Notes under the pieces: generated by a model
What the model was told of the DNA's origin: nothing
The model's input: only the letters and a program-made list of their open reading frames with translations
Databases searched by the model: none
Shown: in pieces, positions 1-63,717 of the stretch
How positions within the stretch are numbered: position 1 is the first letter of the stretch
How the letters are laid out: each line of letters starts with the position of its first letter
From: Mytilus californianus
Taxonomy: Eukaryota
Length of the DNA stretch: 64,000 nt
Assembly (NCBI RefSeq): GCF_021869535.1
Contig: NW_026262734.1
Location: 35,650,001 to 35,714,000 of the forward strand
Reading direction: 5' to 3'
Made by a program: the position numbers and the translations under genes

Positions 1-3000
1 ATATAAACCAGCCCAAGACAGAGAAACTCTGTCAGTTTTATGTGGACCGTTGAAGTGATAACATCACGGATTATATTCCAACTGGTAAGTAGAGTGAATT
101 TAGTGATTCCAAAGGATATATAAATAGTGTTCGGATTTATATGTGGATATTACAATAGTGATTGTGATATAAAGTGAAACTTATATAATAAGTTATTGTA
201 TTAGTGAGAATGCAAGTTGTACTATTGTGGAAGTGTGAATACTTCATAGATGTATATTAGTGAGAATACATGGTGTATACTTGCTGGTGTTGCAAGTTGT
301 TATATTGTGGAAGTGTATAAGTGAAAGTGCACTTCGTTTAACCTTACCAGTTTGGAGAATATTCATTGTGCGGGAACTCATAGGGATAGTTAGTGCGCGA
401 GTTCAGCTGTGTTTATATATATATTCCTTGTGCATGGAAGGATTTGTGCAAGTGTAAATGTGTCATTGTGTTGTTGTTGTTAGTTGCATACTCACAAGGT
501 GATACTACATATTGGTGGACGTTGTAAATAGAAGTTATATATATGTTTGATTTTGTGTTCATATGTTTTGTGTGATACTTACCTGATGCATGTTGCATAG
601 TAATCTGTTGGTGACATTGTGTAATAAAGGGCCTGTTGCATGTTGCATAGTGATCTGTTAGTGACATTGTGAATAAATCGGTCTTATACATGTTGCATAG
701 TGATTGCATAGTGACATTGTGTATATATATTCAGTTATGAAACATTGTGTTTATGCATTGTGAATGAGGTACTTCACCTTGCATTTTGATTTATGTACAT
801 TGTGCTGTGTATATATTTTGCGTTGTGAATCCATTTAAGGATGTGTTAATTGTTTTGAATAGGACAACTGGCTGTGGTGCAAATTTGTGTTTAACACTTG
901 AAATCCTGATTTATTCAGATACGAAAAGTAAAAGGAACATTAAGTCAGTTGATATTGAAATGGCAGATAATCTGTTTGATTCGGAAATTGCAGTTTTAAC
1001 AAGTGAAATTGAAAAATTAGAATACAGCTTAAAACAAAGATTTAGGCATTCACTGCTCAATATTGGTCATATTAATTTATCTACGTTGAAAAGTGTAAAT
1101 GATTCTAGAGATACACTTGTGCTGATTTCATTAAGGATGAAAATGAAGTAACCAGAAATTCTGTTTAGTTTAGGGACATAGGAGCACTTTTCTGAAAACA
1201 TGTCTGTTCAAATTGAATATTTTTGACAAAGAGACTCTGCCTTTAAGACATACAACTAGGCAAATTGAAAATTGTAGAGTAGATGATAAGATATATCATA
1301 TTTGTATATAGTGTACATAGAGTTAAATGTGAGTCCGTCGGATGGGGACGTTAAATCCGATGCCCCATGTACAGGAACATGTCACGCCCTGTGCACGTAA
1401 AAGACCCCTCCTGCAGATTTCGTTAAGAGTAGGCTCCTTGGGGCCGCTGCAGAGGCAAAATTTGTTAGGGACCTTTTAAATTTATTCTTTGGCAGTGACG
1501 CTCAAAATTACAGACGTTAATAGGAAAGAGGTTAATGTTAGAAACAGGGATATTTTGAAGTAGGAAGTTTTAAAAAGTTTTATTCGGACAAAAAGAGAAA
1601 TCCTGTGAATAGTGTTTGTACATCAGAAGAAAGTTCAATATGTTTGATATGGCTGACTGAAATTTGGACATATAGGTAGACTTTGTATCTACGGGTTGTG
1701 CCTTGTGATGTCATCTGTTAAGACCTGATGGACAAAAGTGTAGCCTGACATATTGTCGGATGTAATGGTGCCTGACGTTGTGGTCAGAAGATATATATAT
1801 AATTGAAGATATATATGGTCAGAATCTAACCAAAGTTGTTTGGTATTGTGAAGTGGCAAAGCGGGAAAAGGCTTTGTCTTGATGTATATATGTCCAATGG
1901 AAATAGTGCCTGCACTATGGTAGCGTTTGTGTATGAAAAATGACCACTTTGATAGATGATTTCTCAGCATGTCAGATGTATTCAAGGAGTCATGCGGGAC
2001 GCATGATTTTTGAGGCGTGGGTAGTGTAACGAAAATCGGTCATAGTTCATTTATTTTGATGTGAAATACCAGTTGTCTTTTCCTATTTATTGTGTTTCTA
2101 TATTTATATAAGTTTCTCCATAGTTGGAGCACCATCTGTTACTTAAAACACCCCTAAAGTTGGTATAGTCTTGATTTTCACCCCTTTAAGTATAATGGAC
2201 TGATCCAGATGGTAGTATATAAACCAGCCCAAGACAGAGAAACTCTGTCAGTTTTATGTGGACCGTTGAAGTGATAACATCACGGATTATATTCCAACTG
2301 GTAAGTAGAGTGAATTTAGTGATTCCAAAGGATATATGAATAGTGTTCGGATTTATATGTGGATATTACAATAGTGATTGTGATATAAAGTGAAACTTAT
2401 ATAATAAGTTATTGTATTAGTGAGAATGCAAGTTGTACTATTGTGGAAGTGTGAATACTTCATAGATGTATATTAGTGAGAATACATTGTGTATACTTGC
2501 TGGTGTTGCAAGTTGTTATATTGTGGAAGTGTATAGGTGAAAGTGCACTTCGTTTAACCTTACCAGTTTGGAGAATATTCATTGTGCGGGAACTCATAGG
2601 GATAGTTAGTGCGCGAGTTCAGCTGTGTTTATATATATATTCCTTGTGCATGGAAGGATTTGTGCAAGTGTAAATGTGTCATTGTGTTGTTGTTGTTAGT
2701 TGCATACTCACAAGGTGATACTACATATTGGTGGACGTTGTAAATAGAAGTTATATATATGTTTGATTTTGTGTTCATATGTTTTGTGTGATACTTACCT
2801 GATGCATGTTGCATAGTAATCTGTTGGTGACATTGTGTAATAAAGGGCCTGTTGCATGTTGCATAGTGATCTGTTAGTGACATTGTGAATAAATCGGTCT
2901 TATACATGTTGCATAGTGATTGCATAGTGACATTGTGTATATATATTCAGTTATGAAACATTGTGTTTATGCATTGTGAATGAGGTACTTCACCTTGCAT

Positions 3001-42900: not shown

Positions 42901-45900
42901 TGTCGATGATATTGGAATGTTTAACTTACAGAAAATCAAAAATAAAACAGTATGTATATTTGGAAAGTATTTACAGCCTATCTCAGGTGTACCATATACA
43001 TTTATGGTACAATGTGTCATATTGATATTTCCCTGACTTTTATTGCCCCTCCCAATAGAGAGGATGCAACTTTTGAAGACTATGTTATAAATAATAACGA
43101 TTCACCATAAAAGTTCGAAATGTAAAAACTGTCAACACAAAAGCTAATTGCAAGTATATGAGGATTGGAACATATCAAAGAAAAATAATTTATGTACCCT
43201 TACTTGGGTATACATGTTATCTTATTCTAAATGCAATGAAATTGCTATCTAGTTATGATCTTTATTTTCCAAAATTGAAATTCATTTGGAATTCCCACTC
43301 TTTTGATTCGAGCGTAACTAATGAGTCTTGTATATGACTTCATGACATATGGTATCGCAAGCTTAGACGAGGGTTTATAATGTGTTGGTTTACCTATCCG
43401 CTGACCTGATTGGAAGCAAAAAGTACGAAAACTATGTGTCAACATAAGCCAGAAGTTTTGAAGGTGGAAAATGCGAAAGGAAACCTACATGACTGTGAAA
43501 ATAAATCTAATTTCAAATGGTATAACACTCAACCAGAGACCAACTGACAATACTTGTATTACTAGAAGTCATCTCCAAAGACAGATTTAGGGGGGCAGGG
43601 GACCTTGGTCCCCCTTATGGAGCTACATATATGGTTGATGTATAGACTTTTTACTTGTCTCACTCCAAATGTTGCCTAGTTTGGGCCCCCTTTTTCAAAA
43701 TCCTGGATCTGCATCCGATCTTTACCTTAAAATGCAGCTTTGTCCTTTAGAATGACTTGGATTAAGAAGTGTAATTTATGACTTACTTTGCTATACATAG
43801 ATTTAAAATAATAATTAAATTCTAATTGAAATATACACTAATAATACAGTAAGAGGCAAATTTTCAGATGTTAAAGATTTAGAGCTATTTTCCTAGGGCT
43901 TGTAGTTTAAATGTTTGGTTGGCTTGCTTGCTTTGTTTGTATAAATGTTTACTCAAGCATTGTAATTAAGATTGACATCTACAATCAATATAGATAGGCA
44001 GGGCTTGCATCAGCTTGTGTTCATTATTCTCTGTATTATACTTAACATCCAATAACATTTAAGTATAATGTATACAAGATGAAGCCCCGCCTATCTACTG
44101 ATTGCAGATGTCAATCTTAATTACAATGCTTGAGCAAACATTTATACAAACAAAGCAAGCAACCCCACCAAACCTTTAAACTACAAGCATTAGAAAAATG
44201 GCTCTAAACAGATTTCATGATTATAGGAGATGTTTGGTTTATGTGAATGAGACAGCTATTCAATGGCATGTTAAGATACCTTGTGGTAATATTTGTAATG
44301 TTTGTTATGTGCTAAACAGTCTTCACCAATTGTCTAGCGTCGATACAATATGTTTATTTCTATAAAGTCCAAGAGTCCAGAATAGCCATGAATAAATTTT
44401 TAAAAGACTATCTCTATCTAAGATCTGCCATCAATGCTAAATTCCCTAAATAACAAAAAATGTACAACTATAAAGAACCACTGAAATTCTGTTGTAAGCA
44501 TAGAATTGATATGACCAATAAAAAAGAATAGTCTATTTTCTTTAGAAAATATTTTTTCAATCTTAAGCAGAAATTCTAGGTCATGTTAGTGCTGCAAATT
44601 ATCAATACTGTGGATTCATTTATTTTCGTGGGGTGTCAATTTTCGGCGATTATGGAAATCTTGCATTTTCGTGGCTATTTAATTTCGTGGTTTTTCCAAA
44701 GTCTGCATACAACCTTATATAAAATGTGTCTTTTGTTGAACATTAAAATTCGAGGTTCATCTGTACCAATGAAATCCATAAGAATTGGTATCCAACGAAT
44801 AATAATGAATCCACATTATTATGTTTTTTACATATTAATATATGGTTGACTTTGTAATTGATGTTCTAACAAAAGTGAAAATTGAAAAGTAGAAGAATTA
44901 AGGGAATATTGAAAAAGGGAATATGAGTTATAGTTGCATGGATTTACTGTTATGTACATAAATAAAAAGTGTTAGCTAGTCTTGTTATTAAAATAATGCA
45001 TTCATATCTAAATATTAAAGCTTTTACAAGAAGAAAAAGAAAATGAATTTTTAAAACTAATATTAAAGAAATAACAAGGAATTTCCACAAAAAGCAATGA
45101 TATTTCTAATTTTTAGCAATTGGATAATGTTGAAGAAGGTGATACAATGATTGCTGATGAGTATGCTGCTGAACAAGACATAGAAGAAGAAGATCTTAAT
45201 GCTCAACAGAAAAAACTTACGTTCGATCGAGAGGACAAGGAGCACCTAGATTCTGATCTATACTCGTCTGGTGAGGAAGGAGAGGATGAGCCAGAATTCG
45301 ATGAAATGGATGATGATAACGATGAAGAGATTGAAGGGTATGTTTACAAAATTTATTTCGGCAGAAATAATGCAGGCTATATATTGGTTTATGTCTGTGA
45401 TTTTGTTTTGCAGCCTGTATCTAATGTGTAAGCAATGTAACATTGATGTAAAAAAAATAGATTTTCTTATAAAAGTGAATGAAAAAATAAACTGGAATTT
45501 CTTGAAAAGTGACAGTAAAAAGACTAAAATTTCATTGTACATTTCTTCCTGCAACATACACCTGGTAAAAATATAGCTCTAATGATGACTCGTTGTAGTG
45601 ATTTGGAAGCAGAGGATAATGATGATAATCCATTGCTGGTCAAAATGGAAGGTAGAGACCAAAGGACAGAGAAAAAACTAAATAGTTGGTTCAGTAAGGT
45701 ATGTGAATTATTTGAAGTACATTTTTTTCAATATTGATATTTTCTTACCCGAGACGAAAGTCGCGGAAGGTGAGACATAGGTATCGTTTTTCCAGCGACG
45801 ATCGATCAACAATTGTTAAGTTAGTTTGATAAGACCTATTTGAGATAGATCAATGATATTTTGTATGAAGTTGCATTACTATCAATATATATCAGTTTGA

Positions 45901-48900: not shown

Positions 48901-51900
48901 GTAACAGAAGTCAACTTGTTATTTTACAATTGTAGAGGGCATAATCTTTATATTTTCTGATAATTTCTTTTTTCAATAGCCGTAAAGTGAAAATTTATTT
49001 TTTAAACCTTTTTCACTGACACATTGAGATTTTGCATCTAAATGGGAATTTTATGTTCCAGTTGGATAGGGGGACATAGATTCATACGTATATACTTTTT
49101 TAAAGTCAGTGATTTAATATGAAATATTAAATAAGCAGAAAGAAAATTTGTTCATTAAACTTATTTTGAAATATGAGGCAATTTATTTGATAATTCTTCA
49201 TTGTAGCAGCCAATATCCCGAAGTTAAATGCAGTAGGATTAGCTATTGGTGCTGCCATGGTAACATCAAGGAAGAGAAAACGTGATATTGTTGATGATGG
49301 ATATCATAGGTAGGACTCTACGATGATCTTTTTAAGCTTTGTGAAAGTAGGAAATCCACCTTAAGAAAGTTATGTTGGTTTTTTTTTTTTTTGCCGTATG
49401 ACCTTTTTCTCAATGTTTTACTGATATTATGCATTACTTGTTGCTGTTGAACGAAGGTTCATTGTGATGGAAAAGCGGTGGAAGTATATCTAAGTAATTA
49501 TGATACATAGTAACTGTATTCTTGGTTGATAGTTAGCTTCGTAAAATTCAGTGTTTCACAATTTTTATACGACCGCAAAAATTGAAAATTTTTTGGTCGT
49601 ATATTGGTATGACGTTGGCGTCGTCCAGCCTAGTCCGAAGACACATTGGTTTTCGCACTCTAACTTTAGTTTAAGTGAATGGATCTCCATGAAATTTTAC
49701 CATAAGGTTCAATACCACGAAAGGAAGGTGGGGATTGATTTTGGGGGTTATGGTACCAACAGTTAAGGAATTAGGGGCCAAAAAGGGACCAAAAATAAGC
49801 ATTTTTGTAACTTCCAGACAATAACTTGTGTGTAAGTGTATGGATCTCTCTGACATTGTACCACAAGGTTCCATATCACAAAGGGAAGGCTGTAATTGAT
49901 TTTGGGGGTAATTGCCTCAAAATTTTAGGAATTAGGGGCCAAAAAAGGGGCAAAAAAAAAGCATTTTACTAGTTTCAGTGTTCCAGCTAGCATGAAATGG
50001 AGGGGCGCCGCGCCCCGCCCCCGAAATTTTGCGCCCCTCTGCCTTTTTAAGCGCCCCTCTGCCCTTCTGATGCGCCCCTCTGTGCCCTTTTGAAAAAAGT
50101 TTAAAAAACAATCTTTTTTCCTCATATCATCGCCATTTTGTTGAGTTCTTTATACACACACTTCATTAAGACAACAGATTGAAACTGTTGACACTTGTTA
50201 CCTGTATATAATCACCTATTTGATTAGAGTCAATTACTTAATCAGGTGAAATTTACGACCCTGTCTAATCCCTTTGCCCTGAAGCACCAAACATCCAAGT
50301 TAAATGAATTGATTTTTTAACACCTGACGATGCAATATAGAATTTATAAAATAAATGTGACGATGTTCATTTCTATCGTATTTGTTATTTATAAAATAAC
50401 GTTCATTAAAAAAGAATCATTCCAATAGTATATCGTAAATCGTCAACACGCAAAATGCCGACGAAAAAATGAAAAATTTACCGACTCGAAAATGAAAAGA
50501 AGCAAAGACTTGCCAGTCTATTACATCTTTTTTCAAGAATAATGACCATCAAAGGTAAAAAAATAATTTGATTCTTTACTTTTAAGAAAAATCGAGAAGA
50601 AGAAAGGTTTCTATCAGATATCGCAATTGTTCTTCTATTGTAAATTCCGCCGATTACGGAGCACTCGAAAGTCCGATTTTTATATCATTTTTCTTAAATT
50701 GAAATCCGTTTTGACTAACTTTAATATTGATATTATTAGATACGCTCAACATGAAATATACGGAGATGCTTGTTGAATTGATAATAAACTTTCAAAGTTG
50801 AATTAATTTATTATTGTGCCGATTACGGAGCTCTGGAAAGTCCGATTTTTGTATCAATTTTCTTATTGAAATCCGTTTTGACAAACTTATTGATATTATT
50901 AGATACGCTCAACATGAAATATACGGAGATGCTTGTGTGGAGAAAACTGTCAATTTGTTGACAACAAGAAAGACCCAGAATGACCCATGGCTTCAAAAAG
51001 AGGAACATTTTTTAAGAAGCACATGTAACATTACTAACCCACCCCCAGTAGATAACGACACTAAAGTCAGAGAGTGCTTTCTCAATGGATTAATTGAAAA
51101 TATAACAATTAGATTTATGGATGCTGACACAATCCATCAGTTGGCCATTTTAGACCTTACAGGAACAGACAACATTGAAACAATGTATGGTTTTACAGAG
51201 ATAGAAGCTCTGGCAAATACATTTGACATGGACCCTGAAACTCTCCTTATTCAATGGCAGGAATTTATAGCTCTTGTGTCATCAGCAGAACTTACAGATC
51301 GTTCCTTACCTAGTCTGCTAGAGCTATTTCATTCACCTTGTCATAACCTATTATCTATGTACCCTCTTGTTGCAAAACTATTCAGTGTTGCAATAATACA
51401 ACCACTCAGTACAGCAGAGGTGGAGAGAATATTCTCTCAGGTCAAATTGATAAAGACAAGTCACAGGGCAAACTTGAAAACACAGACATTAACAAAAATA
51501 TTAACTGTAAAATTAAACTGTGATGAAACTAAATTTGAAAAAATTCATGATCAATGTGTGACAACCTTCTTCAAAAAGAAAAACAGAAGACTTGTCAATG
51601 TTGTTTAATATTTATTTGCATTTGAACTCTTCTTTGAAAAAATCTGTAGTTCTGAAAGAGAAATGAATATAGTAATGACTATTAGTGCTCTCAGTTTGAT
51701 TTTATTCTAAATAAATGATTTTTAAACTGGTATATAATAGTATAGAGTATTTAACTTAGCTACATGCTTGCTAAAAATATGTCATTATGTTGTAATATTA
51801 AGTATTTGAATTTTTTCAGTGAGAACGCGCTAAAGTGCCCTTTTTTAAAAACGCGCCCCTCTATTTTCAAATCCTAGCTGGAACACTGAGTTTCATGACA

Positions 51901-54900
51901 ATAACTTGTGTGTAAGTGTTTGGATATTTCTGAAATTGTACTACAAGGTTCCATATCACAAGGGGAAAGCTGGAATTGAGTTTGGGGGTAATTGCCCGAA
52001 ACGTTTAGGAATTGGGGGCCAAAAAGGGGCCAAAAATAAGCATTTTTCTAGTTTCCAGACAATAACTAGTGTTCAAGTGTATGGATCTCTCTGAAATTGT
52101 ACTGCAAGGTACCATACCACAAAGGGAAGGCTGGGATTGAGTTTGGGGGTGATGAATCATAAGGGGGTTCAAAAAATTTGGGGGGGGAATTTTTTTTTTT
52201 TCTTTTTTTCCTTTTTTTTTTCTTTTAAAATTTTCCATTTTAAGTTGGTTATTTCTGATTAATATTTAAAAGCAAATAATAATGATATGGTAGGAGATAC
52301 ACACCAAACAGGATGTGTAAATTATTATATAATAAGTATTGTGCAATAGCAAGAAATTTTCAATTGCACAGTATTGCACAATTGCAAGAAATCTTCAATT
52401 GCACAGTATTGCGCAATAGCAAGAAATCTTCAATTGCACAGTATTGCGCAATAGCAAGAAATATCCAATAGCACAATATTGCGCAATAGCAAGAAATTGT
52501 CAATTGTACAGTATTGCACAATAGCAAGAAATATTCAATTGCACAGTATTGTGCAAAAGAAGATACTTCGTATAAATTGCTTTTTTCTTGATCAATTTGA
52601 ATGGGGTTTTATTCTTGAATTCTTGGGGTTCTTTAATATGCTGAATCTAACCGTGTATTAAGTTTTTGGATTTTGGGCCCCGTTTTTAAATTGGTCCACA
52701 TTGAGGTCCAAAGGGTCCAAAATTTAACTTTGTTTGATTTCATCAAAAATTGAATTATTGGGGTTCTTTGATATGCCGAATCTAACCGTGTATTTAGATT
52801 CTTAATTTTTGGTTCCGTTTTCAAATTGGTCTACATTAAGGTCAAAAGGGTCCAAAATTAAACTTAGTTTGATTTTAACAAAAATTGAATTTTTAGGGTA
52901 CTTTGATATGCTGAATCTAAACATGTATTTAGATTTTTGATTATGGGCCCAGTTTTCAAGTTGGTCCAAATCGGGGTCCAAAATTAAACTTTGTTTGATT
53001 TCAACAAAAATTGAATATATGGGGTTCTTTGATATGCTGAATCTAACCATGTATTTAGATTTTTGATTTTTGGGCCCCGTTATCAACTTTGTCCACATTG
53101 AGGTCAAAAGGGTCCAAAATTAAACTTTGTTTGATTTCATCAAAAATTGAATTCTTGGGGTTCTTTGATATGCTGAATCTAACCATGTATTTAGATTTTT
53201 TATTTGTGGACCGGCTATCAAATTGGTTCATATTGAAGTCAAAAGGGTCCAAAATTAAACTTTGTTTGATTTCATCAAAAATTGAATTATTGGGGTTCTT
53301 TGATATGCCAAATCTAACCGTGTATTCAGATTTTTAATTTTGGGTCCCGTTTTTAAATTGGTCTACATTAAGGTCCAAAGGGTCCAAAATTAAACTTAGT
53401 TTGATTTTAACAAAAATTGAATTCTTGGGGTTCTTTGATATGCTGAATCTAAACATGTGTTTAGATTTTTTATTATGGGCCCAGTTTTCAAGTTGGTCCA
53501 AGTTGGGGTCCAAAATTAAACTTTGTTTGATTTCAACAAAAATTGAATATATGGGGTTCTTTGATATGCTGAATCTAAACATGTATTTAGATTTTAGATT
53601 TTTGGCCCAGTTTTCAAGTTGGTCCAAATTGGGGTCCAAAATTAAACTTTGTTTGATTTCAACAAAAATTGAATATAAGGGGTTCTTTGATATGCTGAAT
53701 CTTACCATGTATTTAGATTTTTTATTTGTGGGCCCGCTATCAAATTGGTTCATATTGAGGTCAAAAGGGTCCAAAATTAAACTTTGTTTGATTTCATCAA
53801 AAATTTAATTATTGGGGTTCTTTGATATGCCAAATCTAACCGTGTATTTAGATTTTTAATTTTGGGTCCCGTTTTTTAAATTGGTCTACATTAAGGTCCA
53901 AAGGGTCCAAAATTAAACTTAGTTTGATTTTAACAAAAATTGAATTTTTTGGGTTCTTTGATATGCTGAATCTAAACATGTGTTTAGATTTTTTATTATG
54001 GGACCAGTTTTCAAGTTGGTCCAAGTTGGGGTCCAAAATTAAACTTTGTTTGATTTCAACAAAAATTGAATATATGGGGTTCTTTGATATGCTGAATCTA
54101 AACATGTATTTAGATTTTAGATTTTTGGCCCAGTTTTCAAGTTGGTCCAAATTGGGGTCCAAAATTAAACTTTGTTTGATTTCAACAAAAATTGAATATA
54201 TGGGGTTCTTTGATATGCTGAATCTTACCATGTATTTAGATTTTTTATTTTGTGGGCCCGCTATCAAATTGGTTCATATTGAGGTCAAAAGGGTCCAAAA
54301 TTAAACTTTGTTTGATTTCATCAAAAATTGAATTATTGGGGTTCTTTGATATGCCAAATCTAACCGTGTTTTTAGATTTTTAATTTTGGGTCCCGTTTTT
54401 TAAATTGGTCTACATTAAGGTCCAAAGGGTCCAAAATTAAACTTAGTTTGATTTTAACAAAAATTGAATTCTTGGGGTACTTTGATATGCTGAATCTAAA
54501 CATGTGTTTAGATTTTTTATTATGGGACCAGTTTTCAAGTTTGTTCAAGTTGGGGTCCAAAATTAAACTTTGTTTGATTTAAAAAAAAATTGAATATATG
54601 GGGTTCTTTGATATGCTGAATCTAACCATGTATTTTGATTTTGGACATTGGACCATAATAGGTAAATTAAAAAAATTGAAGTTCTTAGACCACATTCTTT
54701 CTGTGTCAGAACGCAGAGTTGGAAATTATAGCCCGCCCGACCGCCCGAGACGGCCTATTTTACGATCGGGCGGTCAAAAATTAAATTTCAACAGTCCGGT
54801 GGACGGTCTATTTTTGAAGGTGGCTGGGATTACCTTTTTCTATTTTTGGAATGAGTTCTCAGTATTACCCCATTCATAACAGCACGTAAGAAACATGACT

Positions 54901-57900
54901 GTCAATTAACCTTGTACTACCACGTGTTTCCACACGATTTCTGCAGGGAACATGGTGATACCTGTTGTTTGTAAGATCCGCACTCATTGGCTTGTTGGTA
55001 TCGAATCGTCCAATCACGATCGCGTTTATTGAATAAAAAATAAATATATATAAATAAATTTGTTTTGGTAAACTCGATGTCTTTAAGACAGTACTTGGGC
55101 CTTTTGTCGCCGAAAAAGCGAACTGCTGTTGAATCAACAGAAAAAAATAAATTGTATGATCAGTCTAAGAGGAAGCGGGTAATTGTTCCTGGTTGGAAAA
55201 CGGAGTTCGAGTGGTTGATTTGTGACGACTCGCATGGTAAAATATTTTGTCAACCATGCCGTTCAGCGTATGGGCCCTTGGCTGTCAGAAAAGTACCTGA
55301 AAGATTTCGGCGATATGCAAAAGGCCCGTTTGTAGTTGGTTGTGCAAATTTAAGGCACGATGCCCTTACTACACATGCAAAATCCGATGGCCACAACTAC
55401 GCAGTTGAATTTCTGAAAAATCGAGGACAACCAACAGGAGAGAGTGTAGCTGAAAAAACAGTACAAACCCTCAACAAGGCATCATTTCATAGACTTGAAA
55501 AACTATTTAGGAATGTACATGCCATAGCGAAAAAGTCACGGCCTATTTCTGATTATACATGGCAATGTGAGCTTGACATCCAAAAGGGTATTGACTTAGG
55601 AGACACCTACAGAAACACCAAAAGTTGCAAGGAATTTCTGGTTGCTATTTCGGAAATTGAAAGGGGTAAAATTGAGGAAAAGATTGAACTAGCCAAATTT
55701 TATACCCTTATGTCTGATGGATCCACTGATGTTTCCGTTATTGAAAATGAAATTGTCTACATTCATTTTGCGCATAGAGGTATTGCCTACTGCTATTTCC
55801 TTGGGCTCATTCAGTGTGAGTCTGCTGATTCCAAAGGAATATATGCAGCAATTCTACAAGCTTTGAATTTCAAGAACTTGACGGTCAATGATATTCTTAA
55901 GAGAACCGTAGGATTTGCTGGGGATGGCGCATCAGTGAACACGGGACAGCTGAATGGTGTTATTGCACATTTTCGAGAAAATGCTTCCTCTTCTGTAGTC
56001 ATGGTCCAGTGCATGTCACATAGAATTGAACTTGCATACAAAACTGCTTTCAAGGTATAAAAAGAACAAATTATTAGGTTTGTCTTGTGTTTATTTTTAC
56101 TTTATTCTTTTACTAATAAGGGTATGTTCTTTACTAGTATACTGTTAATTGAGGTACGTTTGACTAGATTAAATGCAATCCAAACATTATTATTTACAAC
56201 TTCTGGTTTTTCTGTTAAAGTCTCCAATTTTTATCATTTTGTGTATCAATCTTACACTGCCACAACAATAAAATAAATTATAAATTAAATTTAAATAATA
56301 CTTCATTCTTCAACATTATGTCATATTCATAACAGTAATACATGAAAAATTTTACAATAGTTATGTAGCTCTCTAATAATCCAAAATAATTCCAAAAATC
56401 CACTTTTAGGTAGCTCCAGTTTTTACTAAAGTCTTTAGTCTCCTAGATGATCTGTTTAAATTTTACCACAAAAGTCCTAAACAGACAAGCAACTTGAAGC
56501 AGACCTTTACCGCACTCAAGATCAAACAGACAATGCCAACAAGGATTGGTGGTACCCGATGGTTAGGACATGTTCAGACTGCCCTAAACAGTCTCTGGAA
56601 GGGATATCCTGCATTTGTCACTCATCTTGGACAGGTAACCATAACGAATTGTCAATGCACTTAGATTTAGAATTAAAAATAATTTGGCTTCGAGCATCAC
56701 TGAAGAGACATTAATTGTTGCTATGTGCATCTGCCAAATCTGGTCACTCACTCACTGATGCAGCAAAATTGGTATTTTTAATTTTACATGATTTTTCAAT
56801 TTATTTTATATTTAAAAAATGAGTACCATACATGTAAGGTTTGTAATACTTTTCTCATACATCAGACAATGATTTTATATTTATACTTTGCCAAGTGAAT
56901 TTTTCAATGAAGACAGTATTTTTTATATTTTATGCTTTAGCTTTCTTTTGATTTTCTATGAACTCATTCCCTCTTAACTGGTAGTCTGAGTCTGTGCATT
57001 ACTTATATACTACATGTACACATTTCTTTTTCAGGTTTCATTACACAACACTCAGAGTGCTACACAATCCAAGGCAAAGTATCTTCTTAAACTTCTCAGA
57101 AGCAAGAGTGTTATTGTATTTGCCCATTTCATTAATGATGTTGTCAATGTACTGACCAAGCTTTCCATGTGCCTGCAGCAGAGAGCTACTTGCCTTTATG
57201 AAGTTCACCAGGATCTAGAGTGTACCATAGCCAATATACAAAAACTAGAAGCAAGGTTCATTTCTATTCAGCTTTAAACATAATACAGGCTTGCACATTA
57301 TCAGCTTCATTTTCTCTTTGTTTGTCCTTTACCAATAACTTTTTTATTGAAACTTATCCAGATATCACTTACATGTTTTAATAATCTTTTATTATTTTTT
57401 TTCAAGTGTCATTCACTTCTTACAGTGCAGTTCTTAGGAAAGGACAAACAATTAGACCTTAGTCTATTAACCATGTAGAGTAGACCATATTTTTTTAATA
57501 CACTTCTATATCATATGCTTTTAATACACTTCTATATCATATGCTTTTAATACACTTCTATATCATGTGCTTTTAATACGTCTTACCTCATGTAATATAT
57601 GCATGTCATGTATAATAATCTGCTTTAAATCTAAAAACCTAATGCACTAATTATATATCTGCATATGATTGACAGATTATTTTTTGTTGATCATGGACTC
57701 GTGTTAATATTCACAGCTAACTTTTTTATAGGCCAGGTCCAGAATTAAGGAAAGTTAGAGAAATTATTAGTAATGATGGCAAATTTGAAGGTGAACTCCT
57801 TGTGGGAAATGATGATTGTGAGGGCCAAACAGTAAAGGTCTTAAAAGCTTTGGTTGAGAGTCTTCAAAAGAGGTTTAAGGATGTAACAGAAGGTGTAAAA

Positions 57901-60900
57901 CAAGCTACCAAGATTGCTGATTTAGCCTCATGGCCTGCAACTATTGATAATGAACCTGGTATATTTGAAAAAATCAGGGCAGATCTGTTCTTTTAAAAAT
58001 TAATTTCTTAATTAACACTATCATGCTGATTTTTGTTTTTATAAAAGTCATATTTTATAATGCTTTGCAAACAGAAATTAATTTTCAAATTCCTTGAAAT
58101 GTTGATTTCTCTACAAACCTGAAAATAAAGATAGATATTGGTGAACCATATAGACTAAATATACAGTTTTCTCTGTGCTACAGCAGCAGTTCCAAATTTC
58201 CAGACAGTTTGTTATTTCTAAGTACATGTACCTAATGTATTTGCAGATTACAATCACAGATCTTTGACATTGCAGATTTTCAATTTTATTTAATAAATTT
58301 GCAAATTTGATTTGAAATTGGAAGTGTTATCTATTGCAGAGTTTGGTGATGAAATGGTGAGCAATCTGGTTGACCACTATAGACAGTTATTGGATCAGAC
58401 TGATGGTGTAGATGTAAGCAACATAGAACCAGAGTGGACAATATTAAAGAACCTATTGTATAAAAAGTGAGTTAAACTGCAATTAGAATTCAGTATTAAA
58501 TGTCAAAAATGCTGAGTTTTGGTGAAAAAAAATGTTCAAGTATTTTTTGTTTTACAGATAAAGGGCTTTGAAAAGTAAACCAAATTGCTTATACCATCTC
58601 TATTCATGATTCATGCAATGATAATTGCTGTATGTCAAAACACATTGTTTTAAATATTTTATGGCTATGTATCTATTTTCAGTCATAAAGTCCATGAGAT
58701 GAATTGGAGCACAATCAATGATCTGTACCAAGACAAGTGTGCCAATGCACTGAATGTAATAGATCTAGTGTTGAGTCTACCAGCAGGAACATCAGAATGT
58801 GAGAGGGGATTCTCACAAATGAAAATTATCAAAAACCAATGGCGTAATAAACTGAAGTCTACATCAATGACATTACTGATGACAATACAATTGCATTCAG
58901 ATCCAATTACACAATTTAACCCTGAACATGCAATCCACCAATGGAACAAGGGGGCTAGAAGACGACCAAACTTCATGCAAAAAAAGGTGAAAAAAACTGT
59001 TGTTCAACAGATGGAAGAAATAATGAATGTCATTGAGGATGAAACACAAGAACTTACAAATACTGTAGATAATTTGGAAACTGCTGCTTCCTGCCCTGAC
59101 AAAGCTGCTGACTCTGACAATGATTCTTGTTTTTCTGACATGGAGGAGGGATTTTATTCTGGTGATGAGATTGGTACTGGTAGTGACAGGAGTGACATTG
59201 ACTGAGTTTCAAATATTGTGAAAATGAGGAGCAATAAAATTATAAATGAAACCAAAATTTTATTTTTATTTGCTTAAAAGTAATTTTGTGGAACAAAGGT
59301 ACAAACAAAGGCATGCTGAATTACACTGAAGACAAACTAACACCCCCCAGTGCCCACCCCAAATTCTAAAAATGAAATCACACCTTGCTTCTGAACAAAT
59401 GGTCATTAGGCTTAGCAGTGTCTGCTTAAATGTGCACTTGTGAGTCTTGTTGCAGTGTGTTTTACATAAGCAGTCATAAGTCATTTTCATCACAAAAAAT
59501 CCTGAAGTTTATCTAATAATACTTCTAGTCATTAAAACATCTCAAAACACAAAAACATAATTTAGAATCTTGAAGGAAAATGGGTTGGATTTTTATTGCA
59601 TTAATTTTCAGGGCTGGTAAATTTTGATCAGGACAGGTAATTTTTTTATGCAGCCAGCCCTGTGGTCTGGTAGACATTTCCAGTGAGTTTCCTACCCTGC
59701 AGAACGTATGCTGTGTCAAATATTTAATCACAATCCAAATTCAGAGCTGTATCAAGCTTGAATGTTGTGTCCATACTTGCCCCAACTGTTCAGGGTTCGA
59801 CCTCTGCGGTCGTATCAAGCTGTGCCCAGCGAAGCATTTTATTATACATTGTACCTTTGTTTTGTTGATTTTTGGTTGCTTAACATCCATTGGTAAACAT
59901 TTCAAGTTCAATACTAGTTTTGAATAGAAGTCAACTATACATGCTTCTGAAACAATTAATGTATAACACTATATATTCATATATTTCAGGTACATGTATG
60001 ATGATGAAGGCCTCCCAGAATGGTTTGTTATGGATGAATCAAAGCATACCAAACGGGATTTACCTGTCACAAAGGTAAGGTATTTACTGTTCATATGTAT
60101 GTTCTGGCAATTTTCCTTTTATGAAAGAACCTTTTTGAAAAACTCAGTTTGGTCATGCTGTATTTATCAGAGGGTATTGCCCCAGTTATGATATTTTTTG
60201 CGACATTGTAATGGAAAAGAAGTAATATGGTGTATTAATGCATGTAAAAAAAAAGATTCAGACATTTGAACAAGCACAAAGTATAGGAACACCGCTTTTA
60301 TTGCCTGTCTTATTATCAAAGTCACAATGAGGACTTTAGCAAAGTACAAAGGCTTACATCTCACTAACTATTTCAGACAGCCAATAGCTTTTTTGAACCA
60401 AATTTCTGGCTTGATGTTGATAATTTAACACCTATGCATTGAAGAACACTGGTTTGAGTAATATTTAATAATTATAGACCAAAGAAATCTTACAAATAAT
60501 GTCAATAGTTTTCTTAATGATCTGATACATACAAACATTAAAACATTTGTGTTAACAGTCAAAGATAGTTAACCAGTAATTGATGAGTTGCCAGGGCCAA
60601 CAGTTTATACAGGAGTGGTCAAATTTAACATTTCGTTTCACCTAAACTGAAAGAATAACTATATCTAAGTAAATGTGTATGATTTAAGGATGAAGTTCAG
60701 AAGAATAAAATGATAAAAATAAATGCATGTAAATGTGTATGATTTAAGGATGAAGTTCAGGAGTATAAAGTGATAAAAATAAATGCATGTAAATGTGTAT
60801 GATTAAAGGATGAAGTTCAGGAGTATAAAATAATAAAATAAAAGCATGTAAATGTGTATGATTAAAGGATGAAGTTCAGGAGTATAAAATAATAAAATAA

Positions 60901-61957
60901 AAGCATGTAAATGTGTATGATTTAAGGATGAAGTTCAGGAGTATAAAATAATAAAATAAAAGCATGTAAATGTGTATGATTTAAGGATGAAGTTCAGGAG
61001 TATAAAATAATAAAATAAAAGCATGTAAATGTGTTTGATTTAAGGATGAAGTTCAGGAGTATAAAATGAAGATGAAAGATATAGATGCTCGTCCTATCAA
61101 GAAAGTAGCAGAGGCCAAGGCTCGAAAAAAACATAGGGTGAGTACATGTCTTATCCATTAAGTTATGTCATTATTAAGAACCTTGATTATAACTTGTTCT
61201 GGTTCTGACTGAGCTGTTATTGTGCTAGGTATTAAGTAGACCTTTATGTCTAGTATTTGGGAACACTAAAATTAGGGAATTTTTAAATGTGATTTTGAAT
61301 TTATTAGGAAGGAAAATTTTATGTTGAACTTTACATAACTGGCAATTCTACAAAATTTGAATAAGATTTTTTTGGAGGTAGGGCTATATGGATAATTGTT
61401 TTGCAGGTTAACCCATGAATGTCTGTTTGACAGAAAAAAATCAAGAATTGATCATTGTATCAAAAATTATAAAAAGCTGGATACATTTCAGAAATAGTAC
61501 AGGTATTTTTAATATATTTTTACACTATGTAGTTTAACAGCATAAAAGTTCCTACATAACCATAAACTTTCATATCTTTTGACCCTTGCATCTTAAAGGA
61601 AAGTAGTGGAACTTAAAATAGCTTGTTACCATAAACTAGGCTACTGTAAACCTTAACTTTGATATATAAGACATAAAAATTCCAATATTAATTGACTAGG
61701 TTGTCAGTTTTCCTGCTGAAAGTCGGTGGTTTCTCCACCTTCCTACACCAATACAAACTGACTGTTATGATATAGCAAATAGTACTGAAAGTAGTTTAAA
61801 ACAATCAAGTAATCAATCAGAAATTTCAATTTTCAGTATAAAATCCTTTTTGTTGATTGTAGGAAGGTAAACGCTTAGATAGAGCCAGGAAGAGAGCTGA
61901 AGCCATCTCTGACACAGTAGATATTACTGAGAGAGATAAAATGCAGCAGATTAAACA
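24948..61957 (+). CDS. FTSJ3: pre-rRNA 2'-O-ribose methyltransferase FTSJ3/SPB1 (3'-incomplete in window). Exons: 24948-25014, 26250-26402, 27181-27260, 32269-32368, 33021-33333, 37037-37145, 37772-37872, 41194-41262, 42109-42216, 42814-42949, 45117-45337, 45599-45698, 48275-48662, 49207-49309, 59990-60074, 61045-61137, 61863-61957
   Basis: [80 protein letters not shown], then acidic/lysine-rich segments and [20 protein letters not shown]. All introns are GT-AG and the phases join without stops (2321 nt). Confidence 0.95.
25790..26200 (-). mobile_element. Degenerate LINE (CR1/L2-type) RT C-terminal fragment in FTSJ3 intron 1
   Basis: Minus translation [55 protein letters not shown], with stops and frameshifts. 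Confidence 0.8.
29892..30877 (+). mobile_element. HINE-like element with degenerate internal tandem repeats
   Basis: Starts TTTTTGTCTTGCC..GTGAGACATA and ends AGGCAAAACAT; repeats contain TCATGGT..TTGACTTTGAA. Related to 45740-46380. Confidence 0.55.
31630..32075. mobile_element. Non-autonomous element with a central long palindrome, class uncertain
   Basis: GATATTTATCCACTCGAGACAGT...AACTGTCGAGAGTGGATAAATATC inverted arms around CGAGGCTCG. Confidence 0.5.
32687..32957 (+). mobile_element. Short HINE-like element
   Basis: ATGCCCC..GGGGCAT 5' hairpin, GTCC/GTAC microsatellite-like tract, 3' palindrome TGTGTCC..GGACACA. Confidence 0.55.
35895..36889 (+). mobile_element. HINE with about 4 copies of a ~160-bp repeat
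   Basis: T-run, subTIR ATACACCCGTC with hairpin GACGGG, (GTCT)n tract, units at 36150/36312/36475/36633/36792, 3' GGGCGTAT plus hairpin and T-run. Confidence 0.8.
38434..40318 (-). pseudogene. ZNF862-like hAT transposase pseudogene (exon 40318-39870 with a frameshift near 40090; intron 39869-39507; exon from 39506, truncated)
   Basis: TTF-type zinc finger [41 protein letters not shown]. The C-terminal catalytic E and hATC domain are missing. Confidence 0.85.
38434..40752 (-). mobile_element. 3'-truncated hAT (ZNF862-like) element
   Basis: 5' end CAGTGATTTTGCTAG at 40752. GTCAGAA flanks both sides (38427-38433, 40753-40759). No 3' TIR. Confidence 0.8.
43301..43345 (+). other. Degenerate minimal hammerhead-ribozyme relic (Penelope/retrozyme type)
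   Basis: TTCGAGCGTAA-CTAATGA-GTC-loop-GAC. CUGAUGA is mutated and GAAA is absent. Confidence 0.35.
43878..44208. mobile_element. Palindromic MITE (~135-bp arms, ~60-bp spacer)
   Basis: The arm CTTGTAGTTTAAA..CTCAAGCATTGTAATTAAGATTGACATCT..GATAGGC is mirrored at about 44080-44208. Confidence 0.8.
44606..44818. mobile_element. Tc1/mariner-type MITE
   Basis: TACTGTGGATTCAT..TATTTTCG / CGAATAATAATGAATCCACA termini in TA context. Confidence 0.65.
45740..46380 (+). mobile_element. HINE-like element with ~190-bp internal repeats
   Basis: 5' hairpin ..GTGAGACATAGG, 3' GGCGAGACATATCTC..ACAGTTT; repeat GGCCCTG..TAGGTCATGGTCCAGTGACT. Confidence 0.6.
46484..47682 (+). mobile_element. Non-autonomous hAT with 5-bp TSD (hAT5-like)
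   Basis: Perfect 15-bp TIR CAGTGTTCCAGCTAG; TSD AACTT (46479-46483, 47683-47687); decayed [10 protein letters not shown] relic near 47330. Confidence 0.9.
49976..51888 (+). mobile_element. Internally deleted hAT with 5-bp TSD (hAT5-like), retaining the C-terminal transposase ORF
   Basis: Perfect TIR CAGTGTTCCAGCTAG; TSD AGTTT (49971-49975, 51889-51893). The ORF ending 51608 has [19 protein letters not shown]; an N-terminal QSITSFFK relic lies near 50515. Confidence 0.9.
52337..52558. repeat. 35-bp minisatellite, about 6 copies
   Basis: Unit GCAATAGCAAGAAATCTTCAATTGCACAGTATTGC. Confidence 0.85.
52600..54640. repeat. Satellite array of 126/135-bp monomers (about 15 copies) with a ~523-bp higher-order repeat
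   Basis: GGGGTTCTTTGATATG recurs every 126-136 bp; the translated ORF pair 53401/53924 shows the 523-bp offset. Confidence 0.9.
55077..59205 (+). CDS. hAT transposase, 766 aa, 6 exons: 55077-56054, 56410-56634, 57035-57255, 57732-57958, 58340-58466, 58683-59205
   Basis: GT-AG introns with consistent phases and no stops. Motifs: zinc finger (FCQPC..HAKSDGH), [31 protein letters not shown] and an acidic tail. AATAAA at 59233. Confidence 0.88.
56684..56735 (+). other. Degenerate minimal hammerhead-ribozyme relic in transposase intron 2
   Basis: CATCA-CTGAAGA-GAC-ATTAATT-GTT-GCTA-TGTGC-ATC. CUGANGA and stem II are kept; GAAA is replaced by GCTA. Confidence 0.4.
60669..61069 (+). repeat. 59-60 bp tandem repeat (7 copies) spanning the FTSJ3 exon-16 splice acceptor
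   Basis: GTAAATGTGTATGATTTAAG|GATGAAGTTCAGGAGTATAAAA starts at 60669, 60729, 60789, 60848, 60907, 60966 and 61025. Confidence 0.95.
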
Positions 61958-62308
61958 GTAAGTTTATTATATAGTGGATAGACTTGGGTTGTTATTGGCT
62001 AATGTATGATTACATGTTAACTCAATGCTTTTCATTGGTATTAGTTCTTACCTCACATGGTCAAAAGGGAAAATGCTATTGCCATCATTCGGTTATGTTA
62101 TAGTCCGTATACTTTCATTCTCGAATTTCCACTCCTAAAAATGGCTTCAAGCTTTTTTGTGAGTGCGGCCACTTGTGTTGTTTCGACACATCTAGTTTCT
62201 TCTTTTCATCATTATTTTGATGCAAGGCATATTTCTGTATTACAAATTTTGTCTTTAGTTGGATGAGAGTAAACATTTTAGTTTTTATGATTTAGATCCA
62301 TCTCTCAT

Positions 62309-63717
62309 TAGTCCCCTACTGAAGGTAACTTTACGTTTGCACTCTGTCCGTCTTTCTGTCTGTCTGTCTGGCTGTCCATTCGTCATTCCGGCAAATCAGT
62401 TTTCCACACTTTTTTCCGTCATGCTTGAAGATATTGATTTGATAATTGGTATATATAGTTTACATCATGACAAGTTACAGATCAAGTACGAATTTTGTTC
62501 CGGTCTAATGATGTCTTCGTCAGCGTCATCGTCGTCTGAAGACATTTGGTTTCCGGACAATAACTTTAGTTTAAGTGTACGGATATCTATGAAATTTGAC
62601 CAAAAGGTTCAATACCACAAAAGGAAGGTTAGAATTGTTTTTGGGGGTGATGGTCCTAACCGTTTAGGAATTAGGGGCCAAAAAGGGGCCCAAAACAAGC
62701 ATTTTTCTAGTTTCAGGACAATAACTTGTGTATAAGTATTTTGATTGCTCTGAAATTGTACCAGAAGGTTCAATACCACAAGTAGAAGGTAAGGATTTAA
62801 TTTGGGGGTAATTGCCCAAACCGTTCAGGAATTAGGGGCCAAAAAGGGTCTAAAACAAGCATTTTTCTAGTTTTCAGACAATAACTTGTGTTTCAGTGTA
62901 TTGATGTCTCTTTAATAAATTGTACCACATTTTACAAAAATATTTTTTTTGGAAAAGGGGGGGGGGGGGGGAGGGGTAAAAAAAAAATTTTTTTTGGGGG
63001 GGGGGGGGGGCAATTTTTTTTCCACAAGATTTAAGAAATTAAAAAGAAAATTTCTTCAAATATTTTTTTGGGCAAAAACATTTTTTTGGGGGGTGTCTTT
63101 GTATATATAGTATTATTTTTGGAAGAGGAGGGGGGGGGTGGATAAAAAAAAAATTATGGGGTAAGAAATTGTCAATTTTCCAAAGAAAAATTTGGGGTCA
63201 CAATTTATTTTGCTAATTCTTTGTATATAGTCTGAAAACAGATTTACTAAATATTGCGCAACAGCACAGTGTTAATCAAAAAAGCTAGAAATCTTCAATT
63301 GAATATAAATTCAAATCATTTAACCAATTTCAAGTTCTTTGACTACATTTATTCTGTGTCAGAAACCTATAATGTGTCAAATATTTAATTACAATCCAAA
63401 TTCAGACCTGTATCAAGCTTGAATATTGTGTCCATTGTTGCCCCAACTGTTCAGAGTTGGACCTCTGTGGTCGTATCCAGCTGTGCTCGGCGAAGCAGTT
63501 TATGTCTAGAGTTATGGTCCTTAGACTTGAAAAATTCACTAAAATAATCAGTTTACCACACTTTTTTTTTGTCATGCTTGAAGATATTGACTTACTATTT
63601 GTTATATAGTTTACACCATGACAAGTTATAGATCAAGTTAGCATTTTGTTCCAGTACAATGAATTTAAACGGTAGGGGACTATGCATTGCCATGCAATAC
63701 CCTCAGAATGCTTGTTT
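62309..63717 (+). mobile_element. HINE with a second, 5'-truncated HINE (about 62511-63501) nested inside
   Basis: Outer subTIR TAGTCCCCTAC / GTAGGGGACTA with a (GTCT)n tract. The inner element shares the ~160-bp repeats and the GTGGTCGTAT..GCGAAGCA end of 49562-59840. Confidence 0.75.

What the first reader, a model, noticed from the sequence alone, without database searches (positions are those of the whole stretch)
60669..61137. Seven tandem copies of a splice acceptor, of which only the last is productive
Each unit holds AG|GATGAAGTTCAG, with AGs ending at 60688, 60748, 60808, 60867, 60926, 60985 and 61044. Use of any of the first six gives a stop within 11-18 codons. Only the last copy has GTGTTTGATTTAAG (T at 61035, where the others have A), a slightly better pyrimidine tract. 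The decoy units also carry AATAAA followed by a GT-rich stretch, so each resembles a ready-made terminal exon that would remove most of the Spb1 C-terminal domain. Copy number could therefore tune FTSJ3 output (inference).
Basis: partly seen in the sequence, partly recalled or inferred. Interest (0 to 1): 0.7.

Follow-up and report, generated by a model that had tools for sequence, protein, structure and literature searches.

The report
Silent splice-acceptor minisatellite in FTSJ3 intron
The last 36 bases of an intron plus the first 23 bases of the next exon of a mollusc FTSJ3 (rRNA methyltransferase) gene are repeated in tandem, giving seven copies of the acceptor, yet the RNA sampled joins only to the last, genuine copy, so this is an ordinary example of a known, apparently harmless splice-junction repeat ("mirage").

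Summary
A 59-60-base minisatellite (60669-61067, 6.7 copies, 97% matches) straddles the intron/exon boundary of a Spb1_C-coding exon of FTSJ3. It gives seven copies of AG|GATGAAGTTCAG at exactly the stated positions. Six lead to a stop at codon 11 or 18.

RNA does not support the regulatory reading. One raw RNA-seq run and two transcript assemblies show only the junction 60074|61045. They show no decoy junction, no extended exon and no coverage or ends at the AATAAA sites. Array sequence in the RNA runs is no deeper than unique intron sequence, as unspliced pre-mRNA would give. DNA contigs of a different haplotype enter the array from both sides, and its unit is about 6-fold over single-copy depth, so the array is not an assembly artefact.

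The true acceptor differs from decoys 5 and 6 by one base (T61035) over 82 bases. Choice of the last copy is best explained by exon definition: the acceptor nearest the 5' splice site across the exon is used. This repeat type is already described: "mirages" in amphioxus, and the mirror-image human F7 intron 7 VNTR. This scan has 19 earlier notes naming mirage minisatellites elsewhere in this same genome. Verdict: new member of a known kind, low interest. Copy-number tuning is unsupported but not excluded below about 25% usage (about 2% in one transcriptome).

The parts
60669..61067 (+). 59-60-nt minisatellite (6.7 copies). Each unit is 20 nt of intron 3' end, the first 23-25 nt of the exon and a 16-17-nt A/T-rich tail.
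   Evidence: TRF; unit alignment
60669..60985 (+). Six silent decoy 3' splice sites (AG ending at 60688, 60748, 60808, 60867, 60926, 60985). Each gives a premature stop at codon 18, 18, 11, 11, 11, 11.
   Evidence: no junction reads to any of them
61025..61044 (+). Authentic 3' splice site (AAG), the only one used. It carries the private T at 61035 (-10).
   Evidence: Junction 60074|61045 in X23 (10 reads, 9 starts), X1 and X2 contigs
61045..61137 (+). FTSJ3 exon (31 codons, Spb1_C profile positions 99-128). Its first 23 nt are part of the repeat unit; a purine-rich stretch begins at +24; the donor is AGG|GTGAGT.
   Evidence: Pfam E 1.3e-10; human FTSJ3 residues 723-752; junction 61137|61863
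59990..60074 (+). Upstream FTSJ3 exon (Spb1_C profile positions 70-97), donor AAG|GTAAGG.
60075..61044 (+). 970-nt intron whose last 376 nt are the array.
   Evidence: joint with GT..AG ends
61863..61957 (+). Downstream FTSJ3 exon (Spb1_C profile positions 131-159).

Best explanation
This is a 'mirage' minisatellite. Slippage or unequal exchange duplicated a roughly 60-nt segment spanning the intron/exon boundary, and the duplicate then grew into an array. Because the extra copies lie upstream of the exon, they are simply part of the intron. The spliceosome ignores them because acceptor choice here is made by exon definition. The flanking introns are long (970 and 725 nt), and the copy nearest the strong downstream donor (93 nt away, across a purine-rich exon body) is the one paired. 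The decoys are followed by A/T-rich intron-like sequence and would make exons of 152-449 nt. The single T at -10 may add a little. Any rare mis-splice carries a premature stop far upstream of later junctions and would be removed by nonsense-mediated decay. Shown: the array, the identity of the signals, and exclusive use of the last copy at the depth available. Inferred: the origin by slippage, the exon-definition mechanism, and neutrality.
For: Array and seven acceptors. Gene and frame; the three exons are colinear in Spb1_C. RNA: only 60074|61045 and 61137|61863 are seen. X23 has zero depth across 60105-60995 apart from 0.31 in one bin. In X1 and X2 the array appears as an 89-nt contig (59+30, a closed k=31 cycle) at depth 5.0 and 5.4. 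Unique intron pieces stand at 2.1 and 4.6, and exons at 24.8 and 297.8. The true acceptor and the decoys at 60926 and 60985 are identical from -59 to +23 except at 61035, and candidate branch sites are the same. No RNA structure hides the decoys (z +1.1). Central units are identical and edge units diverged, as in amphioxus mirages (PMC3087553). With long flanking introns, the splice sites closest across the exon are preferred (PMC9225289). In the mirror-image F7 VNTR only the exon-adjacent copy is used, although the pseudo-sites are functional (PMC1557585). Mirages do not disturb splicing in amphioxus.
Against: Depth is low. Zero of at most 10 junction reads only bounds decoy use below about 26% (95%). 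Contigs drop rare variants. No sample had nonsense-mediated decay inhibited, so decoy use followed by decay is only bounded, not excluded. T61035 is confounded with position, so site strength and exon context cannot be separated here. Copy-number variation was not measured. Neutrality is an inference.
Confidence: 0.8

Rival explanations
1. The decoys are used at a meaningful rate as poison acceptors or as short terminal exons ending at their AATAAA, so array length sets how much productive FTSJ3 mRNA is made.
For: Every decoy has the same AG, tract and candidate branch sites as the real site. Each has a stop and an AATAAA with a GT-rich stretch after it. Tandem-repeat length is associated with splicing in humans (title and abstract of PMC10078293, listed).
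Against: No decoy junction, no coverage and no listed read ends in the array in raw RNA reads. Array depth is at most about 2% of exon depth in X2 and no higher than unique intron. Suppose all seven sites were used equally and decay removed 90% of the products. Decoys would then still be about 37% of junction reads, and seeing 0 of 10 would have probability about 0.009 (own arithmetic). AATAAA is common in this 33% GC DNA, at 1.6 per kb.
Confidence: 0.07
2. Site strength decides, not position. The A-to-T change at 61035 lengthens the U run, makes the last acceptor the only competent one, and was selected for that reason.
For: It is the only difference within 82 nt from decoys 5 and 6. It raises the pyrimidine count from 8 to 9 of 17. 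All seven acceptors are weak AAG sites, so a small gain could matter.
Against: One pyrimidine in a still poor tract is a small effect. In the F7 VNTR, identical pseudo-sites stay silent through position alone. Private changes in edge units are expected from repeat turnover. Earlier notes of this scan report last-copy use in other arrays (not checked here).
Confidence: 0.12
3. Assembly artefact. The array, or its copy number, does not exist in the animal.
For: Short-read contigs cannot span it. X20 contigs stop at 60698 and restart at 61040, so the count of seven rests on the window's assembly alone.
Against: Contigs of a different haplotype (about 1% different) enter the array from both sides. 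The unit's depth in X20 is 199.6 against about 34 for single copy. Closed-cycle 89-nt contigs of the unit occur in two further studies. The units show ordered variant blocks, not noise.
Confidence: 0.03

Closest known systems
'Mirage' minisatellites of amphioxus (Adh3, globin BflGb6 and BflGb9, troponin C, PGBD5; PMC3087553, PMC3902484, citing Canestro et al. 2002)
   Same: The tandem units span an exon-intron boundary. In BflGb6 the unit is likewise the 3' end of an intron plus the 5' part of the next exon. Many copies keep AG or GT signals, normal splicing is undisturbed, central units are homogenised and edge units diverge.
   Different: The host is a mollusc, not a cephalochordate. The unit is 59-60 nt in a ribosome-biogenesis gene. 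Length or somatic instability was not measured here.
Human F7 intron 7 37-bp VNTR (PMC1557585)
   Same: A minisatellite whose terminal unit contains the real splice junction, producing five to nine identical pseudo-sites that stay silent. Only the exon-adjacent copy is used.
   Different: It is the mirror image: 5' splice sites with the first copy used, against 3' splice sites with the last copy used. F7 has been tested with 50 constructs; nothing has been tested here.
Proximity rule under exon definition (PMC9225289) and the engineered duplicated globin splice sites reviewed in PMC1557585
   Same: Competing equal sites flanked by long introns: the pair closest across the exon is chosen, which predicts use of the last copy here.
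   Different: Those are statistical or engineered cases with two sites. This is a natural seven-site array.
Poison-exon splicing coupled to nonsense-mediated decay, and splicing-associated tandem repeats (PMC10078293)
   Same: On paper, each decoy gives a premature stop, and repeat length could change splicing.
   Different: The defining feature, detectable use of the unproductive site, was looked for and not found.

Membership tests
Mirage (splice-junction) minisatellite | Tandem array of minisatellite-sized units (10-160 bp reported) | tested here: met
   Period 59-60, 6.7 copies, 97% matches
Mirage (splice-junction) minisatellite | The unit spans an exon-intron boundary and so copies the splice site plus exon sequence | tested here: met
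   The unit holds the AG acceptor and exon bases +1 to +23/25. The boundary is fixed by RNA junctions and Pfam colinearity.
Mirage (splice-junction) minisatellite | Regular splicing is not disturbed; only the authentic terminal copy is in the mRNA | tested here: met
   Only 60074|61045 is seen, in one raw RNA run and two transcript assemblies from three studies. Sensitivity is limited to about 25% in raw reads and about 2% by depth in X2.
Mirage (splice-junction) minisatellite | Repeat turnover pattern: central units homogenised, boundary units divergent | tested here: met
   Unit strings 4 and 5 (between successive acceptors) are identical and strings 3 and 6 each differ from them by one base. 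Strings 1 and 2 are a diverged 60-nt type, and the T61035 change in string 6 belongs to the true acceptor.
Mirage (splice-junction) minisatellite | Length polymorphism or instability between haplotypes | tested here: inconclusive
   Unit depth in X20 is about 5.8 times single copy, against an expected 3-4 times from the window's count. This is only a hint.
Poison acceptor coupled to nonsense-mediated decay | Detectable use of the unproductive splice site in RNA | tested here: not met
   No decoy joints, and array depth equals intron background. No decay-inhibited sample was available.
Intronic polyadenylation terminal exon | Poly(A) signal hexamer with a downstream GU-rich element | tested here: met
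   AATAAA in every decoy unit, followed by a GT-rich stretch. The hexamer is frequent in this A/T-rich DNA, at 1.6 per kb.
Intronic polyadenylation terminal exon | RNA 3' ends or coverage ending at the site | tested here: not met
   No places where molecules end and essentially zero X23 depth in the array. No 3'-end sequencing was available.
NAGNAG or adjacent tandem acceptors | Competing AGs 3-18 nt apart sharing one branch site and tract | tested here: not met
   The copies are 59-60 nt apart, each with its own upstream signals.

The most novel reading that the evidence does not exclude
The array is a heritable, copy-number-variable attenuator of an essential rRNA 2'-O-methyltransferase. A minority of transcripts splice to decoys and are lost to nonsense-mediated decay, or end at the built-in AATAAA. 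Longer alleles would then give less FTSJ3. Conversely, the decoys might act as a landing pad that concentrates U2AF/U2 and helps the weak AAG acceptor.
Probability: 0.05. Interest if true: 0.6.

Novelty: new member of a known kind. Interest (0 to 1): 0.22.

Why it matters
Taken alone it is ordinary. It has three modest uses.

First, it is a clean natural version of the duplicated-3'-splice-site experiment. The true site and two decoys are identical over 82 nt but for one base, so position and exon context can be separated from site strength with one minigene series.

Second, it adds to the evidence that mirage repeats, described in amphioxus and in a few human genes, also occur in molluscs. 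My paper searches found no mollusc report.

Third, such arrays can mislead gene predictors into truncated models.

Tried and rejected
1. RNA structure masking the decoys: the fold of 60640-61140 is no more stable than shuffles (z +1.13), so rejected.
2. A branch-site difference between the decoys and the true site: there is none. The candidates lie inside the unit and are identical, and no YTNAY match occurs.
3. Origin of the 16-17-nt unit tail from the exon body or from the upstream intron: local alignments are no better than shuffles (p 0.37-0.86), so it stays undetermined.
4. Other junction-anchored arrays in this window: TRF over 1-59000 gave none on a junction I could confirm. The 34-nt array at 45448-45533 lies inside an intron-like stretch.
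5. Copies in other samples: an exact 23-nt unit core gave 0 hits in metagenome contigs.
6. Rfam: no family in the window.
7. The original mirage paper (PMC117041) is not held. It is cited only through PMC3087553.
8. The exons were searched singly by reference. For that reason orthologous loci of other species could not be fetched.

Full report
**The observation.** The sequence and Tandem Repeats Finder show one array at 60669-61067: period 59, 6.7 copies, 97% matches, no indels, score 710.
- An exact search finds AG|GATGAAGTTCAG seven times on the + strand and nowhere else in the window.
- The AGs end at 60688, 60748, 60808, 60867, 60926, 60985 and 61044, with spacings of 60, 60, 59, 59, 59, 59.
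- In the exon's frame the six upstream copies reach a stop after 17, 17, 10, 10, 10 and 10 sense codons. The last opens 31 codons.
- T61035 (-10) is private to the last unit.
- All 11 AATAAA of the intron lie in the array.

Two details were missed. The acceptors at 60808 and 60867 carry T>A at -5. All seven are weak AAG acceptors with 7-9 pyrimidines in -20..-4, against 11 and 12 at the two neighbouring acceptors of the gene.

**The gene.** The flanking exons translate to pieces that hit Pfam Spb1_C colinearly:
- 59990-60074 matches profile positions 70-97.
- 61045-61137 matches positions 99-128.
- 61863-61957 matches positions 131-159.

An upstream ORF carries the end of the FtsJ methyltransferase domain. 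The exon after the array aligns to residues 723-752 of human FTSJ3 and to yeast Spb1 from pre-60S structures. The gene is therefore the FTSJ3/Spb1 orthologue on the + strand. A decoy stop would remove the protein from about Spb1_C profile position 105-115 onward. The DNA is 31-36% GC. Run labels say mollusc. Earlier notes of this scan call the genome the California mussel, which I did not check.

**RNA evidence.** The single reads call laid one raw stranded RNA-seq run (X23), two transcript assemblies from other studies (X1, X2) and one DNA run (X20) on 59700-62100.
- The only joints inside the gene are 60074|61045 and 61137|61863, both GT..AG. Each is seen in 10 reads (9 and 10 different starts) in X23. 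Each is also in one contig in X1 (depth 24.8) and one in X2 (depth 297.8).
- No joint to any decoy was listed, although the listing threshold was set at 2%.
- X23 has zero depth from 60105 to 60995 apart from 0.31 in one bin. Extended exons starting at a decoy, and mini terminal exons, are therefore absent at that depth. No read ends are listed there.
- In X1 and X2 the array appears as an 89-nt contig, which is 59+30, the signature of a closed 59-nt cycle in a k=31 graph. Its depths are 5.0 and 5.4, while unique intron pieces stand at 2.1 and 4.6. The cycle collapses three or four units, so the per-unit depth is at or below the intron background. That is what unspliced pre-mRNA gives.

My own arithmetic follows. 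Zero of at most 10 junction reads bounds decoy use below about 26% (95%). If the seven sites were equivalent and decay removed 90% of the products, decoys would still be about 37% of junctions, and 0 of 10 would have probability about 0.009. X2 suggests a ceiling near 2%, with the caveat that contigs show presence, not absence.

**Is the array real?** X20 contigs differ from the window at about 1% of positions, so they come from another haplotype. One runs into the array and stops at 60698. Another restarts at 61040, as a de Bruijn assembler must at a repeat. The unit's depth is 199.6 against about 34 for the flanks. Together with the cycle contigs in X1 and X2, the array is present in three studies. 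The exact count of seven rests on the window's assembly. The 5.8-fold depth, against an expected 3-4-fold, hints at copy-number variation but proves nothing.

**Why only the last copy?**
- From -59 to +23 the true acceptor is identical to the decoys at 60926 and 60985 except for T61035.
- The AG-free zone upstream of each is 21 nt, and every candidate branch adenosine lies inside the unit and is shared.
- The array RNA is not more structured than shuffles.
- Apart from one base, what differs is what follows +23. After the decoys comes A/T-rich tail sequence. After the true site comes a purine-rich exon body and, 93 nt on, a strong donor (AGG|GTGAGT).
- The flanking introns are 970 and 725 nt long.

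Published analysis shows that, when competing sites are flanked by long introns, the 5' and 3' sites closest across the exon are chosen (PMC9225289). The human F7 intron 7 VNTR is the exact mirror of this array, and there 50 constructs were tested. They showed that identical pseudo-sites are functional, yet only the exon-adjacent copy is selected (PMC1557585). I therefore take exon definition by proximity as the mechanism. T61035 would be at most a helper, and nonsense-mediated decay a backstop. These steps are inference.

**Comparison with what is known.** After I had formed the neutral-VNTR reading, earlier notes of this scan supplied the name 'mirage', and I checked it in the literature. 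[quoted passage not shown] They are reported in globin genes, where the BflGb6 unit is the 3' end of an intron plus the 5' part of exon 2. They are also reported in troponin C and PGBD5. They do not interfere with splicing, vary between haplotypes, and show central homogenisation with divergent boundary units (PMC3087553; PMC3902484).
- The present array meets four of the five listed features.
- The fifth, polymorphism, is undecided.
- The unit pattern fits: unit strings 4 and 5 are identical, strings 3 and 6 each differ from them by one base, strings 1 and 2 are an older 60-nt type, and the T61035 change in string 6 belongs to the true acceptor.

Nineteen notes of this scan name mirage minisatellites elsewhere in this same genome. 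Those are unchecked leads. My paper searches found no report of such repeats in Mytilus.

**Verdict.** 'Only the last is productive' is right and is now backed by RNA. This is a modest new member of a known kind.

Noticed in passing
window 54688-54710, 59703-59845 and 63341-63503: The hAT element at 54714-59699 splits one copy of a very abundant dispersed repeat of about 165 nt. The repeat's first 23 nt sit just before the hAT and the rest just after it. An uninterrupted copy, 89% identical, lies at 63341-63503. The repeat has RNA depth of about 3000 and DNA k-mer depth of about 3 million, against 34 for single-copy DNA.
   Followed up: partly
window 49310-59989: The FTSJ3 intron upstream of the studied exons is 10.7 kb. 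Its donor at 49309|49310 was found from the transcript contigs' loose end. It holds a 126-nt satellite (52615-54642, 15 copies), a 35-nt array (52335-52563) and the hAT.
   Followed up: partly
window 582-723 and 2798-2939: Two TRF rows have identical period, score and consensus (50-nt unit, 2.8 copies). This implies a direct duplication about 2.2 kb apart.
   Followed up: no
window 61045-61056: A better-looking CAG|G acceptor lies 12 nt inside the exon. Using it would delete four codons in frame. The RNA joints show that the weaker AAG at 61044 is used instead.
   Followed up: partly
window 49661-49967, 51906-52094 and 62549-62905: A 161-nt unit recurs as short tandem arrays and dispersed copies. 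It has a recurring open frame (peptide KVQYHK...FGG...LGIRGQKG) and is probably a mobile-element fragment.
   Followed up: no
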